Shown here one piece after another: positions 3,592-43,946 of a DNA stretch of 64,000 nt. Made by a program: the position numbers and the translations under genes. Each line of letters opens with the position of its first letter. The stretch's first letter is position 1. The DNA lies in the NCBI GenBank assembly GCA_025603075.1, contig MU626337.1, positions 1 through 64,000 on the forward strand, in the 5' to 3' direction. The stretch comes from Neoconidiobolus thromboides FSU 785 (taxonomy: Eukaryota; Fungi; Entomophthoromycota). The notes under the pieces were generated by a model. That model did no database searches, was not told the DNA's origin, and saw nothing but the letters and a program-made list of their open reading frames with translations.

Positions 3592-3688
3592 GTGTATTTT
3601 TTTTGGTTTCATTACTTTTTTCATTTTTTAAGCGCTATTTGAGTGGAAAGATTTTTAGTAAAATTCTTAAATACAAAAGTACACCTCC
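3592..3688 (-). mobile_element. MITE copy (reverse orientation), back-to-back with the next copy
   Basis: Core ttaagcgctatttgagtggaa. TSD ATAT at 3588-91 and 3689-92. Confidence 0.85.
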
Positions 3689-25747: not shown

Positions 25748-25843
25748 AGGGATGTGTTTTTTTGTTTAAGGATTTTACTAACAATCTTTCCCCTCAAATA
25801 GCGCTTAAAAAAATGGAAAAGTAATGAAACCAAAAACATCCTC
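25748..25843 (+). mobile_element. MITE copy
   Basis: AGGGATGTG...CATCCTC. Flanks GTAT and ATAT. Confidence 0.88.
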
Positions 25844-32301: not shown

Positions 32302-32398
32302 GGAGATGTGTTTTTTTGTTTAAGAATTTTGCTATAATCTTTCCACTCAAATAGCGCTTAAAAAATGGAAAAATAATGAAACTAAAAAAAACAGTCCC
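32302..32398 (+). mobile_element. MITE copy with AGAT target-site duplication
   Basis: AGAT|GGAGATG...CAGTCCC|AGAT. Confidence 0.9.
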
Positions 32399-37468: not shown

Positions 37469-37539
37469 GCGTACATAGTATAGAGGTAGAATACTTCTCT
37501 TCCAAAGAAGTGGCCTGGGTTCGATTCCCAGTGTACGCA
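37469..37539 (+). tRNA. tRNA-Gly (TCC), intronless
   Basis: Acceptor stem GCGTACA/TGTACGC, anticodon stem CTTCT-CTTCCAA-AGAAG, T-arm CTGGG-TTCGATT-CCCAG. Confidence 0.95.
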
Positions 37540-38724: not shown

Positions 38725-40808
38725 ATGAGTGAAAAGAAAACAAGTAAACTGAAGACTTGGTTTGGAGGTGGGAAAGACAGTTCAAAAAAGAAAGAAGTAA
38801 GCTCTCTTCCGGTTAGAGCTAGTATCGATATGAGTAGAGAAAACTCTAGCAATAGCTCTGTTTCTTCGCCAAAATCAGGTCCCCACTCAGTTAAAAGCCC
38901 AGCATTATCGATAAGATCTACTGGAAGCTTCACTCAAGAGCCTAAGGCAGTTGAAGTTCAAAAATTAAAAAAAGGTACATAAATAAATAAATTGATTTTA
39001 ATTTTTGGAGTTAAGAAAATAATTTTCTAGATACACCAAGATCTCCCTTATCTAGCTCTTTCTCTGGAAATACCAATGGTTTTAAAAGTATATCTACAAA
39101 AACTAGTAGTAGTATAAAAAGCCCAGGACTAGCTAAAGTTTCTTCAATGGTAAATGATTTAAGCTAAGTGGGTCAATTAATTTATTCAAATTTAGGAAAA
39201 ATTAAAAGGGTTGATGAATATTGGAGTAGGAAATAAGGAGGCGGCCAGGGAAAGAAGAGGAAGTTTAAGGAGTTTGAATGAATCCACACCTTTGCAAAAA
39301 TCGGTCACCCAACCATATATAAGTAAATCAGAGCAGGATTCTGGATTCCCAAAAAGTCCAAGTGTGGCTTCTTACAGGTCTAGTGTACTAGTCGGAGACA
39401 ACCAGGAGGTTAAAATGAAAGTCAATGAGCTTGAAAAAGGATATCAACAACTTAAAATGCATGTGAGTGCGATGGTATCTTTTGAAAAAGAGAATCTAGA
39501 TGAGGCAGCCAAAATCCTTCAAAATGCTTTCAAAGCTTACAGAGTAATTAATTTAATGTCATATAATAGTCATTTATTTAGACCTTATAAAACAGATTCG
39601 AAAATATTATTTATTAAGAAAAAATCACTTGCTCTATAATACTACTTTAGATCCACCTAACTTCTCTCATTTTGAAGAATATGCAAATTCCGTACAGTTG
39701 TATAAGGGTAATTTACATTATAATTATACAATAGTGTTAAAGATGATTTATATATTTCAAATTACTAGGTGATAAAGATAGTGATCAATATGAAGACAAA
39801 ATAAAATTAATTCAACATACTGTTAGAGGATTTCTAATACGTAAACGCTTCAAACTGGTAATGACTTTTGACTTTTATGCCACAAAGATTCAAGCCGCTT
39901 GGAGAGGATATCAAGTTCGAAATGTGAAGGCTGGGATTAGAATACCATTTTCAAAAATAATTAAAAGTATGGGGGCACAATCCTTGGCTACTAGAAAGCT
40001 TCAAGATGAAGTTACAGAGTTAAGAGAAGCAGTGAAAATATTAATAAACTCTGTTAATAGACAAAACGACTTGGCCAGTACTAATACTTTAAAATCCCCT
40101 TTAAAATCTAAAACTCTGTCTGTACCTCGTAAATCTTCCTTTTCCAATGAAAATAGCGTAAATTTACCAACTAAATCACCTTTATCAACAAAACTTGTGG
40201 TTAAAGCTGGCGCTACTAATAAACCTCTTCGTAAGCCATCACTTCCATCCATTAATAATAATAATAGCAATGCCTCCAAACCTCCATCAACAACTAACAA
40301 TGCATCCAAAAAAGAAAGTGGGAATATAAGTAAAGCTAAAGCTCCGCGTAAAGCCTCGATGTCATCTAACGATAGTTCAGGTAATAAGTTAGCTAATTCA
40401 GTTTTATCAAAGCCAAAAACAAAAACGCCTGACGAGCTTCCTAACATTGTAGAAAATAACAGGAAAGGAAGCGGGTTAGGTAATGAAATCAAACCTGCTA
40501 AAACACTAGAAGGTATTCCTAAAGTAACAACACCAATTCCATTAGAAGATGAAGAAGGAGAAAGCACAGGTACTGTAGGTAAAAAAGAAGCAAGATCCTT
40601 TAAAAGAGGACATCAACCGCGTAGCTATAGTATGTCAAATAGTGAATTTAGATCTAGGTTGCCCCAGCCTGGTACTTTCGGAGCCAGATTAGCAGAAAAG
40701 CTTGGAACTACTGTTGCTCCGGCATCCGAGAAGGAATATACTAGCTTGCTAGCAGAAGTAGATGCAGTGCGTTTAATGGTACAGGACCAATTGAAACTTA
40801 AACCATAA
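38725..40808 (+). CDS. IQ-motif (calmodulin-binding) protein, 5 exons (38725-38974, 39031-39149, 39196-39543, 39596-39707, 39769-40808), about 622 aa
   Basis: IQ motifs ILQNAFKAYRIRK, IQHTVRGFLIRK and IQAAWRGYQVR, short coiled coils and S/K/P-rich disordered arms. The exon sum of 1869 nt is in frame. Confidence 0.8.
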
Positions 40809-41350
40809 CTGAGATTATTGATATCAAGTTAGCTGAAGTTTTAAAATTTTAAATGTTACCGTTACTTTAGCTACCATAGCTTATGCTTTATATAGTTTAC
40901 ATTTTGCTTATCTGTCTATAATTTAACTTTGACTATTTTTTACCTCGCATTCTTTGATTAAACTGCTATTCATGAGTTTATAATTAAATTGTTTTTTACA
41001 TAGTTTCTTGAGTTCTGCTATGTATAGTAGCTAAATTGAAGCTTCTGACATGATGTACTTGTAAGCAACAATCTATTTGCTTAATATAGACTAAATAAAA
41101 ATCACTTTTAAATTAATAAACATATTAAATTCATTTTAATCTATTTGAATTAATTGGAATAGTTTGTGACAATAAAGTTTTAATCATTTTTAAAAATTTA
41201 GATGTTCAAAAAATCGAACAAGTCATTACTCGTTTTAGTGTAAGTACGTTTTTTTAAAACTGAGCCATTTGATTGGTTGTCATCTAATTTACAATTTTTA
41301 AACAAGTATTGCTAGAAGTTAAATTTCTTTTTGATTAGTTTTAAAATAGA

Positions 41351-41865
41351 ATGTCAACTAAAAAACAAGAAAACGAAACAAAGTTAGAGGCAAAAGAAAG
41401 CAATATAAATATAGAAGGCATTGCACCAGAGCTAGGGTAGGAAATAAAATGAACTAATAAATGCTTTAATTATATTATATTTTATTTTGTTTTAGAATTA
41501 ACTATCCATTTCCACCAGCTTTAAAATATAGCTATCCAGAACCAAATGAAAAAATAATAAGGAACATAGCGCACGCTTTACTTCATGATAAGAAATTCTA
41601 TACAAACACATTAAATCTGATGAATAAAATGAATTTACCCCCACCGTTTGAAATGGATAAAGAAATAGTACATAAAAATAATAAGTAATATTTTTATACT
41701 GATTGGGTTTAGGAAAAGAGATTGGAGGAAGATCCAGGATTAAGTTTAATTATTAAAAAGAAGGATCCTCTTTTGGCAAGCGATGAATCGGAAATGGAGC
41801 TAAGTGAGGATGAGAATTTGGCTAAAGTTAAACTTCTTTCCTCATTAAAGAAAAGAAAAAAGTAA
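41351..41865 (+). CDS. RNPC3: RNPC3 (U11/U12-65K)-like protein lacking intact RRMs, 3 exons (41351-41436, 41496-41667, 41713-41865), about 136 aa. Possible extra 5' exon at 41202-41239
   Basis: GIAPELGINYPFPPALKYSYPEP...NIAHAL...KFYTNTLNLMNKMNLPPPF and LASDESEMELSEDE match the RNPC3 central region (GIAP...LKYMYPPP...NIVNAL...KFYVQVLHLMNKMNLPTPF; LSSEESEYES). Not in the ORF track because it is spliced. Confidence 0.82.
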
Positions 41866-42038
41866 TACTCTCGCATTTGATTATATTATTACTATAACTT
41901 AACTACTACCTATTTTATAAAATAGCTTCTTGCTTTTATAAAATACTAAAATATTAGATATATGAAATAAATTCTGCTATGTATTAAACAGTTATATTGC
42001 TTTAGTTTCAAAATAACTATTTCAATTGATAAATATAT

Positions 42039-42132
42039 GGAGGTGTTTTTTTGGTTTCATTATTTTTCCATTTTTTAAGCGCTATTTGAGTGGAAAGATT
42101 GTAGTAAAATTTTTAAACAAAAATATATCACC
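42039..42132 (-). mobile_element. MITE copy
   Basis: TSD ATAT at 42035-38 and 42133-36. Confidence 0.9.
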
Positions 42133-42320
42133 ATATGTTAATATTTCTGAGTAGTTGTAGACCACATAATAGATTAGTGTTTATAATTTAAATAATAAAT
42201 TAAAATGTCTAAAACAATAGTTTATATAAATATGCTTTATTAATGAAGTAAAATGGAAATTAAAATGAACTTTAAATGCTTTTTTCAATACATGTAATTA
42301 GCTATAATCCACTGGTTAAG

Positions 42321-43946
42321 TTAATAATATGTACTGGTGGTAGCGTAGGTTGGAGTGGAGTAATAGGTAGAAGTTGGTGAGTAGTATGCTGAAGTTTGGG
42401 TACCATAATTATTCCAATTGTTTTGGGTGTTACTGTTGTAATTAGCTGGATAACGGTTCCAAACAGCTTGATTATTATTCATATTTCCATTGAAAGCAGC
42501 ATAACGATTTAAATGTTGACCAATGGCTCCGTGAGCGTTATAGGGAAGATTTTGACTGTAACCCATTTGATTTAAAGATGGTAAATTATTTGGGGCTTGT
42601 TCAACCATATCATCATCACAATCGCTAATCATTACAACTTCATAACGGATACGACATTTCTTACTACGTGGCATACTGGCTGTTTCACATTTAGCTGGTG
42701 CAGTGTAGGCCGGAGCACTATAAGAGGAGGTGTAAGCTGGAGCACTATATGATGAAGTATAAGCTGGAGCACTATAAGAGGAAGTGTAAGCTGGAGCACT
42801 ATAAGAGGAGGTGTAAGCTGGAGCACTATATGATGANNNNNNNNNNNNNNNNNNNNNNNNNNNNNNNNNNNNNNNNNNNNNNNNNNNNNNNNNNNNNNNN
42901 NNNNNNNNNNNNNNNNNNNNNNNNNNNNNNNNNNNNNNNNNNNNNNNNNNNNNNNNNNNNNNNNNNNNNNNNNNNNNNNNNNNNNNNNNNNNNNNNNNNN
43001 NNNNNNNNNNNNNNNNNNNNNNNNNNNNNNNNNNNNNNNNNNNNNNNNNNNNNNNNNNNNNNNNNNNNNNNNNNNNNNNNNNNNNNNNNNNNNNNNNNNN
43101 NNNNNNNNNNNNNNNNNNNNNNNNNNNNNNNNNNNNNNNNNNNNNNNNNNNNNNNNNNNNNNNNNNNNNNNNNNNNNNNNNNNNNNNNNNNNNNNNNNNN
43201 NNNNNNNNNNNNNNNNNNNNNNNNNNNNNNNNNNNNNNNNNNNNNNNNNNNNNNNNNNNNNNNNNNNNNNNNNNNNNNGCTGGAGCAGTGTATGATGAAG
43301 TGTAAGCTGGAGCACTGTATGATGAAGTGTAAGCTGGAGCAGTGTAAGAGGAAGTGTAAGCTGGAGCAGTGTATGATGAAGTATAGACTGGGGTACTATA
43401 AGAAGAAGCATAAGTAGAGGTTGAGCAAGAAGTTGAGGAAGAGTAAGAGCAGGTTGAGCATGCCTTTGAGGTATAAGCTGGAGTAGTATAATAGCTGGAG
43501 CTAGAATACTTTGAAGTGTAAACTGGAGTAGTATAATAGCTAGAGGTATAAGCTGGAGTAGTGTAATGAGAGGAAGAAGAGGTATGATAGCTAGATGAAT
43601 AATGGGAACCAGTACCATATGTCGAGGTAGTACAGCTAGTTGATGACTTAGTGTATGCAGGAGTAGTGTAGTATTGAGAAGTATAACTTGGAGTTACATA
43701 ATGTTGAGAAGTATAGTAACTAGAAGAATGATAATGACCAGTTGAAGTAGTACATGAAGATGAAGAGGAGTAACCTTTAGCATTATAGTTATTCCAGTTA
43801 TTTGAAGAGTCATGTCCATAGTCTTCTACATCATAATCATTTGAGCTTCCATAATTATTTGAGCTTCCATAGTTATTATTATACTTTGGGTTAGCAGCGA
43901 TGGTAGAAACCAACAAAGTAAAGATTGAAAAGATTAATTGAACCAT
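42321..43946 (-). CDS. Secreted Tyr/Ser/Thr-rich tandem-repeat (cell-wall/adhesin-like) protein spanning an assembly gap
   Basis: Signal peptide MVQLIFSIFTLLVSTIAA, (APAYTSSYS/T)n repeats and a Cys-containing KCETASMPRSKKC segment. The true length is unknown because of the Ns. Confidence 0.82.
   Translation of the reverse strand: MVQLIFSIFTLLVSTIAANPKYNNNYGSSNNYGSSNDYDVEDYGHDSSNNWNNYNAKGYSSSSSCTTSTGHYHSSSYYTSQHYVTPSYTSQYYTTPAYTKSSTSCTTSTYGTGSHYSSSYHTSSSSHYTTPAYTSSYYTTPVYTSKYSSSSYYTTPAYTSKACSTCSYSSSTSCSTSTYASSYSTPVYTSSYTAPAYTSSYTAPAYTSSYSAPAYTSSYTAPXXXXXXXXXXXXXXXXXXXXXXXXXXXXXXXXXXXXXXXXXXXXXXXXXXXXXXXXXXXXXXXXXXXXXXXXXXXXXXXXXXXXXXXXXXXXXXXXXXXXXXXXXXXXXXXXXXXXXXXXXXXXXXXXXXXXXXXXXXXXXXXXXXXXSSYSAPAYTSSYSAPAYTSSYSAPAYTSSYSAPAYTSSYSAPAYTAPAKCETASMPRSKKCRIRYEVVMISDCDDDMVEQAPNNLPSLNQMGYSQNLPYNAHGAIGQHLNRYAAFNGNMNNNQAVWNRYPANYNSNTQNNWNNYGTQTSAYYSPTSTYYSTPTYATTSTYY
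42700..43390. repeat. 27-bp coding minisatellite (gtgtaagctggagcactataagaggag-type unit) with an N-gap at 42837-43278
   Basis: Units are visible on both sides of 442 Ns. Confidence 0.92.

What the first reader, a model, noticed from the sequence alone, without database searches (positions are those of the whole stretch)
41202..41865. RRM-less RNPC3 (U11/U12-65K): a minor-spliceosome core protein reduced to its central linker
Seen: an intact spliced ORF of about 136 aa carrying the RNPC3 central signature (GIAP...LKY.YP...NI..AL...KFY...L.LMNKMNLP.PF), the acidic S.ESE patch and a terminal KKRKK. It stops there, and downstream is AT-rich non-coding DNA and a MITE. A possible upstream exon (41202-41239, MFKKSNKSLLVL-V) splices in phase to the AG before 41350, but only about 110 nt separate them, too little for a full RRM1. 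Known: RNPC3 bridges U11 and U12, and its C-terminal RRM binds the U12 snRNA 3' stem-loop. The minor spliceosome is lost in Dikarya but kept in several early-diverging fungi. All introns I resolved here are U2-type. Inference: either a snapshot of minor-spliceosome decay or a repurposed RNA-binding-free module.
Basis: partly seen in the sequence, partly recalled or inferred. Interest (0 to 1): 0.8.

Follow-up and report, generated by a model that had tools for sequence, protein, structure and literature searches.

The report
RRM-less RNPC3 (65K) gene, conserved
This insect-associated fungus expresses a 136-residue remnant of the minor-spliceosome bridging protein RNPC3/65K that keeps only the short piece thought to dock onto the U11 particle and has lost both RNA-binding domains; a distant relative has the same stripped gene, so it looks like a stable variant rather than a gene caught decaying.

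Summary
Window 41351-41865 (+) carries a three-exon gene for a 136-aa protein identical to the deposited model K502DRAFT_365520 of Neoconidiobolus thromboides FSU 785.

**Family.** A profile of its central motif finds 621 family representatives. Most are 400-560 aa RNPC3/65K proteins with the motif in the middle and an RRM after it.

**No RRM.** This protein has none, and no RRM coding lies anywhere in the 64-kb window. Flanking genes leave no room for one.

**Expression.** RNA contigs confirm intron 1. Intron 2, with the inferred GTACAT donor, is spliced in runs of a related strain but retained in the reference-strain contig. The proposed upstream exon has no RNA cover.

**Conservation.** Entomophthora muscae has the same RRM-less architecture, with intron 1 at the identical codon and phase. 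The loss is therefore old and maintained, which argues against a snapshot of decay.

**Likely role.** The retained motif corresponds to human RNPC3 143-192, which is predicted to bind PDCD7/ZMAT5 on U11. Other notes of this scan, not tested here, report RNA-confirmed AT-AC introns and U11 protein genes in this genome. The best reading is a U11-docking subunit without the U12 RNA tether.

**Open point.** A separately encoded RRM2 protein could not be excluded. The scan also noted this same stretch in another window.

The parts
41351..41436 (+). Exon 1, from the ATG to the first two bases of the Gly29 codon (residues 1-28 plus 2 nt). It encodes the start of the conserved motif (GIAPELG).
   Evidence: An RNA contig from run X3 covers 41352-41435 joined to exon 2. 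In-frame TAA at 41342-41344.
41437..41495 (+). Intron 1, 59 nt, GT..AG, phase 2.
   Evidence: A joint skipping 59 nt is seen in the X3 contig at depth 272. The E. muscae orthologs have an intron at the same codon and phase.
41496..41667 (+). Exon 2. It holds the rest of the conserved RNPC3 central motif, up to LMNKMNLPPPF (motif as a whole: 41417-41649).
   Evidence: The AF2 model gives a helix hairpin at residues 47-59 and 63-73 with pLDDT about 80.
41668..41712 (+). Intron 2, 45 nt, GTACAT..TTTAG, phase 0, only partly spliced. If retained, the product is 92 aa ending ...EIVHKNNK.
   Evidence: The joint 41667->41713 appears in runs X1, X2 and X5 at depths 21-51. The intron is retained in the X3 contig and in an X1 contig at depth 84.
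41713..41865 (+). Exon 3. It carries the acidic patch PLLASDESEMELSEDE (41767-41814), the basic tail KKRKK (41848-41862) and the TAA stop.
   Evidence: The patch aligns with the LLASDESE(L/I)E patch of full-length family members.
41202..41239 (+). It is not supported and is not counted as part of the gene.
   Evidence: RNA depth is zero over 41114-41335 in four runs. The exon is absent from the deposited model.

Best explanation
This is a genuine, transcribed ortholog of RNPC3 (U11/U12-65K) that lost both RRMs before Neoconidiobolus and Entomophthora diverged. What remains is three elements: (i) the roughly 58-residue central motif, which in human RNPC3 (residues 143-192) is predicted to form a composite domain with PDCD7/U11-59K and ZMAT5/U11-20K; (ii) the conserved acidic SDESE patch; and (iii) a basic, NLS-like tail. 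I infer that the protein enters the nucleus and docks as a small helix-hairpin peptide onto the 59K/20K module of the U11 snRNP, completing or stabilising that module. It cannot tether U12 snRNA itself. In this lineage, U11-U12 pairing would then be dispensable, carried by other contacts, or supplied by a separately encoded protein. Shown here: the gene structure, its expression, its family membership, the absence of RRMs at the locus, and conservation of the architecture in E. muscae. Inferred: PDCD7/ZMAT5 binding, nuclear import, and a role in U12-type splicing.
For: The gene model equals the deposited protein. The central-motif profile finds 621 representatives, and among the listed best 150 the full-length (400-560 aa) ones carry the motif at about residue 120-250 with an RRM2 after it; this protein scores 3e-37. 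The Atlas look-alikes are all 'RNA-binding region-containing protein 3' clusters. Pfam finds no RRM, and the positive controls do hit. tblastn with seven full-length members hits only 41479-41862 in the 64-kb window. E. muscae P0147 and P0161 have the same architecture; intron 1 is at the same Gly codon and phase 2, intron 2 is phase 0 at a near-identical place, and no RRM coding lies within 6 kb either side. RNA contigs show splicing. The bioRxiv paper 10.1101/2023.12.22.573053 and PMC11874965 report that AF2 and fuzzy cryo-EM density place RNPC3 143-192 on PDCD7 and ZMAT5, and that the disease residues G148 and P162 lie in that segment. The matching Gly29 and Pro43 are invariant in alignment A3. 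The AF2 monomer shows a helix hairpin with the rest disordered. An independent precedent exists: orthologs in Lichtheimia and Absidia lack RRM2 at their loci, and the Lichtheimia corymbifera U12 snRNA is reported to lack stem III (PMC4133162). Scan notes report RNA-confirmed AT-AC introns plus 35K, 25K, 59K-like and 20K-like genes in this genome; these are leads only.
Against: No binding was tested, and the partner genes in this genome are known only from untested notes. The interface helix is exactly where this protein departs most from the family consensus: DK replaces VP, NT replaces QV, and N replaces H. In the reference strain the assembled transcript retains intron 2, which would remove the acidic patch and the basic tail. 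The whole genome could not be searched for a separate RRM2-type protein, and the two word-index searches that found none are weak negatives. The equivalence to human residue numbers rests on my recollection of the human sequence, checked only by the fact that G148 and P162 fall on a Gly and a Pro.
Confidence: 0.6

Rival explanations
1. Gene fission. The U12-binding RRM2 survives as a separate gene elsewhere, possibly as an RBM41-type paralog taking over. It would associate with this peptide or with U11, so the classical U11-U12 bridge is kept in two pieces.
For: RBM41 is an ancient paralog that carries the same type of RRM and binds the U12 3' stem-loop (PMC11039992). The conserved acidic patch has no assigned partner. 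The absence of an RRM2 protein was tested only with word-limited searches.
Against: No N. thromboides or E. muscae protein appeared in the RRM2 profile search. No note in this scan flags a second 65K or RNPC3 locus. In Lichtheimia, loss of RRM2 goes together with a U12 that lacks the stem III to which RNPC3 is described as bound, which points to true loss there.
Confidence: 0.2
2. Repurposed or regulatory peptide. The module still binds PDCD7/ZMAT5 but acts as a cap or competitor, or has moved to a role outside the minor spliceosome.
For: It is small and mostly disordered. The interface helix is divergent. Intron 2 is variably retained, giving two isoforms.
Against: No full-length 65K is known in this genome for it to compete with. 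The motif is known only from the RNPC3 family: Pfam has no other family for it, and the nearest Atlas clusters are all RNPC3.
Confidence: 0.1
3. Non-functional relic drifting towards loss, as in the reader's 'decay snapshot'.
For: Both RRMs are gone. Nearly invariant family positions are substituted. Intron 2 is poorly spliced.
Against: The ORF is intact. The same architecture and intron positions occur in another family of the order. The motif, the acidic patch and the basic tail are all kept in both species. The gene is transcribed. Between-strain differences look fewer in the gene (roughly 3%) than in the neighbouring non-coding DNA (6-9%), although the list of differences was truncated.
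Confidence: 0.07
4. Annotation artefact: distant RRM exons are spliced onto this gene.
For: The X3 contig carries 20 unplaced letters 5' of position 41352.
Against: No RRM-like coding lies anywhere in the 64 kb. The upstream gene's transcript runs to about 41081, and a minus-strand gene begins at 42321. The stop codon lies in exon 3. The E. muscae models agree.
Confidence: 0.03

Closest known systems
Human RNPC3 / U11/U12-65K, the molecular bridge of the U11/U12 di-snRNP
   Same: It shares the central motif (IAPxxG..YP..LxYxYP..NI..A...FY..L.LMNKMNLPxPF). That motif corresponds to the segment predicted to bind PDCD7 and ZMAT5. It also shares the downstream acidic S-E-rich patch.
   Different: It lacks the N-terminal RRM. 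It also lacks the C-terminal RRM, with its N-terminal extension, that binds the U12 (and U6atac) 3' stem-loop. It is 136 aa long, whereas most family representatives are 400-560 aa.
Entomophthora muscae DSO57_1023405 / DSO57_1024094 (P0147, P0161)
   Same: It has the same RRM-less layout: a short N-terminus, the motif, an acidic patch and a basic tail. It has three exons, with intron 1 at the identical codon and phase. It is 58% identical over the motif.
   Different: It is longer (183 or 211 aa) because of an extra low-complexity spacer, and its introns are long (about 660 and 520 nt). The two copies differ in their C-terminal reading frame.
Short Mucorales orthologs (Lichtheimia ornata, Circinella, Absidia glauca, Halteromyces, Chlamydoabsidia, Cunninghamella)
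   Same: They have the motif and the acidic patch, and they end shortly after the patch without RRM2. The Lichtheimia and Absidia loci have unrelated genes downstream.
   Different: They keep the N-terminal RRM (for Absidia). Other Mucorales keep RRM2: Radiomyces, Phycomyces, Apophysomyces and Thamnidium.
RBM41
   Same: It is a component of the minor spliceosome and a paralog of 65K (PMC11039992).
   Different: RBM41 shares only the C-terminal RRM with 65K. It has none of the segment that is retained here, so the two are complementary fragments of the 65K plan.

Membership tests
RNPC3 / U11/U12-65K (by descent) | Conserved central motif ending LMNKMNLPPPF | tested here: met
   The profile hit is E=3e-37. 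All twelve columns invariant in alignment A2 are kept. Pfam has no competing family.
RNPC3 / U11/U12-65K (by descent) | Acidic SDESE patch downstream of the motif | tested here: met
   LLASDESEMELSEDE aligns with LLASDESE(L/I)E of the fungal members.
RNPC3 / U11/U12-65K (by descent) | Orthologous gene structure with a relative | tested here: met
   Intron 1 is at the same Gly codon and phase 2 as in E. muscae; intron 2 is phase 0 in both.
RNPC3 / U11/U12-65K (as the U11-U12 bridge) | N-terminal RRM | tested here: not met
   No Pfam RRM. No RRM1-like coding in the window. Only about 270 nt separate the end of the upstream transcript from the ATG.
RNPC3 / U11/U12-65K (as the U11-U12 bridge) | C-terminal RRM with N-terminal extension that binds the U12 3' stem-loop | tested here: not met
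   The protein stops after KKRKK. There is no RRM2-like coding in the 64 kb and no Pfam hit.
RNPC3 / U11/U12-65K (as the U11-U12 bridge) | Binding to U11-59K (PDCD7) | not testable with these tools
   Inferred from motif homology to human residues 143-192. The partner sequence in this genome is not in hand.
RNPC3 / U11/U12-65K (as the U11-U12 bridge) | Host has a working minor spliceosome (U12-type introns; U11, U12 and U6atac snRNAs) | not tested
   Known only from notes of other agents of this scan. The window has no convincing U12-type intron and no snRNA.

The most novel reading that the evidence does not exclude
Entomophthorales run a working minor spliceosome with no 65K-U12 RNA tether at all. 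On this reading, the only part of 65K that cannot be lost is the short hairpin that docks on PDCD7/ZMAT5, plus its acidic patch. The textbook U11-U12 protein-RNA bridge would then be dispensable or rewired. Stepwise loss is visible across early-diverging fungi: some Mucorales lost RRM2, and Entomophthorales lost both RRMs.
Probability: 0.35. Interest if true: 0.8.

Novelty: new variant of a known kind. Interest (0 to 1): 0.6.

Why it matters
In animals, 65K is described as the bridge that holds U11 and U12 together, and mutations in its U12-binding RRM cause disease. This fungal order reportedly still splices AT-AC introns, yet it has kept only the U11-docking peptide of 65K. That makes it a natural deletion experiment. 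It separates the protein's U11-side structural role from its U12-tethering role. It also predicts co-evolution of the U12 3' stem-loop, as already reported for Lichtheimia. Finally, it delimits a minimal, evolutionarily indispensable segment of RNPC3 that includes two human disease positions.

Tried and rejected
1. PDB sequence searches with the protein and with the motif profile found no chain containing this segment of RNPC3, so no solved structure could be used.

2. I searched for a stand-alone RRM2 protein in two ways: a 59-sequence RRM2 profile restricted to short proteins, and the RRM2 of P0151. Neither returned a N. thromboides or E. muscae protein. The index is word-limited; it had also missed E. 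muscae P0147. These are therefore weak negatives.

3. A group of unnamed Logan proteins (P0151, P0288-P0292) has an 'LMNRMN' variant of the motif, with RRM2 and sometimes RRM1. It first looked like a full-length Entomophthoromycotina relative because of a shared 'TLL(N/H)C' signature. Its nearest neighbours, however, include a mite protein, and E. muscae is not close to it, so I dropped it as a dating point.

4. A tree built on the 58-column motif places N. thromboides, E. muscae and that group in one unresolved cluster with support 87. That is too weak to use.

5. I scanned the window for U12-type introns (5' splice-site motif plus branch motif). It gave only implausibly long candidates.

6. 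I attempted a dN/dS estimate from the laid contigs. The table of differences was truncated and two haplotypes are present. Only a rough contrast can be stated: about 3% divergence in the gene against 6-9% in flanking non-coding DNA.

7. Benecke et al. 2005 (PMC1201347) is not held in the library.

Full report
**What is there**

The window is AT-rich eukaryotic DNA with a GC fraction of about 0.22-0.32. Joining 41351-41436, 41496-41667 and 41713-41865 on the + strand gives a 411-nt CDS and a 136-aa protein. That protein is 100% identical to the deposited 'hypothetical protein K502DRAFT_365520' of Neoconidiobolus thromboides FSU 785. The fungus belongs to Entomophthorales, family Neoconidiobolaceae.

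The protein has three recognisable parts:
- the motif GIAPELG...LMNKMNLPPPF at residues 23-80;
- the acidic patch PLLASDESEMELSEDE at residues 105-120;
- a terminal KKRKK.

An in-frame TAA at 41342-41344 closes the frame upstream.

**Transcription**

I laid contigs of four RNA runs on 40300-42500.
- The run whose contigs match the window without differences (X3) has a 471-nt contig. It removes intron 1 exactly (59 nt, GT..AG) but runs straight through intron 2.
- Three runs of a closely related strain (X1, X2, X5) show the 41667->41713 joint (45 nt, GT..AG) at depths 21-51. These runs also contain contigs that keep the intron.

Intron 2 is therefore real but inefficiently removed. The retained form would end after 92 residues and would lack the acidic patch and the basic tail.

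Because exon 3 encodes a patch that aligns with the family's LLASDESE patch, the spliced frame is the conserved one.

It would add only 13 residues in any case.

One loose end remains. The X3 contig has 20 letters 5' of position 41352 that were not placed.

**Family**

Pfam has no model for the protein. I built a profile from the central region of the first hits (A2) and searched it against 1.84 billion representatives. It found 621 proteins at E<=0.001.

Among the listed best 150, most full-length representatives are 400-560 aa. They carry the motif at about residue 120-250, followed by RNP2/RNP1 signatures of a C-terminal RRM.

Names recovered for members include 'RNA-binding region-containing protein 3', 'RBM40' and 'U11/U12 snRNP SNRNP65'. 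The feature search of the ESM Atlas also returns RNPC3 clusters first.

The window's protein scores 3e-37 against the profile and keeps every column that is invariant in A2. It departs from the family at several nearly invariant positions in the second half of the motif: VP becomes DK, QV becomes NT, and H becomes N.

**Absence of RRMs**

Pfam RRM_1 is found in the full-length controls from Piromyces and Radiomyces and in the Absidia ortholog. It is not found in this protein or in the E. muscae one.

tblastn with seven full-length family members hits only 41479-41862 in the whole 64-kb window.

The flanks leave no room. The upstream + strand gene stops at 40808 and its transcript runs to about 41081. 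A minus-strand Ser/Thr-rich gene ends at 42321.

**Conservation of the stripped form**

Entomophthora muscae (Entomophthoraceae) has two copies, P0147 (183 aa) and P0161 (211 aa). Both have the same layout: a short N-terminus, the motif, an acidic patch and a basic tail.

I solved their exon structure on the genomic loci.
- Intron 1 lies inside the Gly codon of IAPxLG at phase 2, exactly as in the window.
- Intron 2 is phase 0, about 15 residues after PPPF, as in the window.
- No RRM coding lies within 6 kb on either side.

The double loss therefore predates the split of two families of the order, and the remnant has been kept since. That is hard to reconcile with a gene caught in decay.

**A second, independent case**

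Several Mucorales orthologs end shortly after the acidic patch, at the same aligned place, while keeping RRM1. These are Lichtheimia, Circinella, Absidia, Halteromyces, Chlamydoabsidia and Cunninghamella. In contrast, Radiomyces, Phycomyces, Apophysomyces and Thamnidium continue into RRM2.

At the Lichtheimia ornata and Absidia glauca loci the next genes are unrelated, and no RRM2 coding is found downstream.

The Lichtheimia corymbifera genome paper reports that its U12 snRNA lacks stem III and has a short last stem (PMC4133162). A review describes RNPC3 as bound to U12 stem-loop III (PMC11874965). I infer that protein domain and RNA element were lost together in that lineage.

**What the retained part does**

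The U11 snRNP structure preprint reports a high-confidence AlphaFold2 interface between PDCD7 415-450, the N-terminus of ZMAT5 and a 'disordered region' of RNPC3. The modelled segment is 143-192 and the interface is 175-190, consistent with fuzzy cryo-EM density (10.1101/2023.12.22.573053).

A review places the disease substitutions G148A and P162S in this segment (PMC11874965).

By my recollection of the human sequence, 143-192 is exactly this motif. On that numbering, G148 and P162 fall on the Gly of IAPxxG and the first Pro of YPPP. The corresponding Gly29 and Pro43 are invariant in alignment A3.

An AF2 monomer model of the window's protein gives a helix hairpin (residues 47-59 and 63-73, pLDDT about 80) in an otherwise disordered chain. 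That fits a peptide that folds on its partner.

**State of the minor spliceosome in this genome**

I could not test this. The window has no snRNA and no convincing U12-type intron, and the tools do not reach the rest of the genome.

Notes of other agents of this scan report several AT-AC introns removed exactly in RNA: in syntaxin-6, HBS1, GMF and a cyclophilin gene. First-reader notes report genes for 35K, 25K, a 59K-like protein and a 20K-like protein. I use these as leads only. They moved me from an even bet to thinking the machinery is active.

No note flags a second RNPC3 or 65K locus.

**Reading**

The most likely account is a U11-side docking subunit that has lost the U12 RNA tether (confidence 0.6).

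The main rival is fission, with an RRM2 or RBM41-type protein encoded elsewhere (0.2). My two searches for one were negative but weak.

Repurposing (0.1), a neutral relic (0.07) and an annotation artefact (0.03) are less likely, for the reasons given in their entries.

**Novelty**

I found no paper that mentions minor spliceosomes together with Conidiobolus. The papers I opened on fungal minor splicing contain no description of a truncated 65K.

It is a new variant of a known protein family rather than a new kind of system. Its value is as a natural deletion experiment on the U11-U12 bridge.

Noticed in passing
window 42030-42130 (core 42074-42104); also 3627-3657, 25779-25809 (-), 32332-32362 (-): A short repeat of about 100 nt, MITE-like, with G-rich/poly-T ends. 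Its core occurs four times in the window against 0 expected. It is present in very many RNA contigs (depth 1,000-20,000), with many different flanks.
   Followed up: partly
window 41668-41712: Intron 2 of the gene is retained in the reference-strain RNA contig even though intron 1 is removed from the same molecule. The retained form stops after 92 aa. This may be regulated or simply inefficient splicing at a weak GTACAT donor.
   Followed up: partly
window about 41330-41352: The 471-nt RNA contig of run X3 has 20 letters beyond position 41352 that lie nowhere in the laid stretch, and the alignment stops one base inside the ATG. The 5' end of the mRNA is therefore unsettled.
   Followed up: no
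L004 5001-6100 (Lichtheimia ornata); L005 5001-5967 (Absidia glauca): The RNPC3 orthologs of one group of Mucorales keep RRM1 and the linker but lack RRM2, with unrelated genes directly downstream. The published Lichtheimia corymbifera U12 snRNA lacks stem III. This looks like co-loss of the protein domain and its RNA target.
   Followed up: partly
L001 7468-7815 versus L002 7466-7729 (Entomophthora muscae): The two E. muscae copies differ in the reading frame of the last approximately 30 codons, giving 211-aa and 183-aa products. They may be alleles, or duplicates with an indel.
   Followed up: no
window 40754-41081 and 41568-41670: The runs of 'organism A' hold two sequence versions of this region. 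One is identical to the window. The other is 5-9% different and is the more abundant. This suggests two strains or haplotypes in those samples.
   Followed up: no
window 42321-43946 (-), N run 42837-43278: A Ser/Thr/Tyr-rich tandem-repeat (SSY(T/S)APAYT) gene, of the secreted or wall-protein type, is interrupted by a 442-N assembly gap.
   Followed up: no
window 37469-37539 (+): This tRNA gene is the only Rfam hit in the window.
   Followed up: no
L003 (Logan contig of SRR31023092) and proteins P0288-P0292: An unnamed clade of RNPC3 proteins has an LMNRMN variant of the motif and a 'CQTD' box. Some of its gene models lack RRM1. The organism is unknown, and the nearest named neighbour is a mite protein.
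   Followed up: partly
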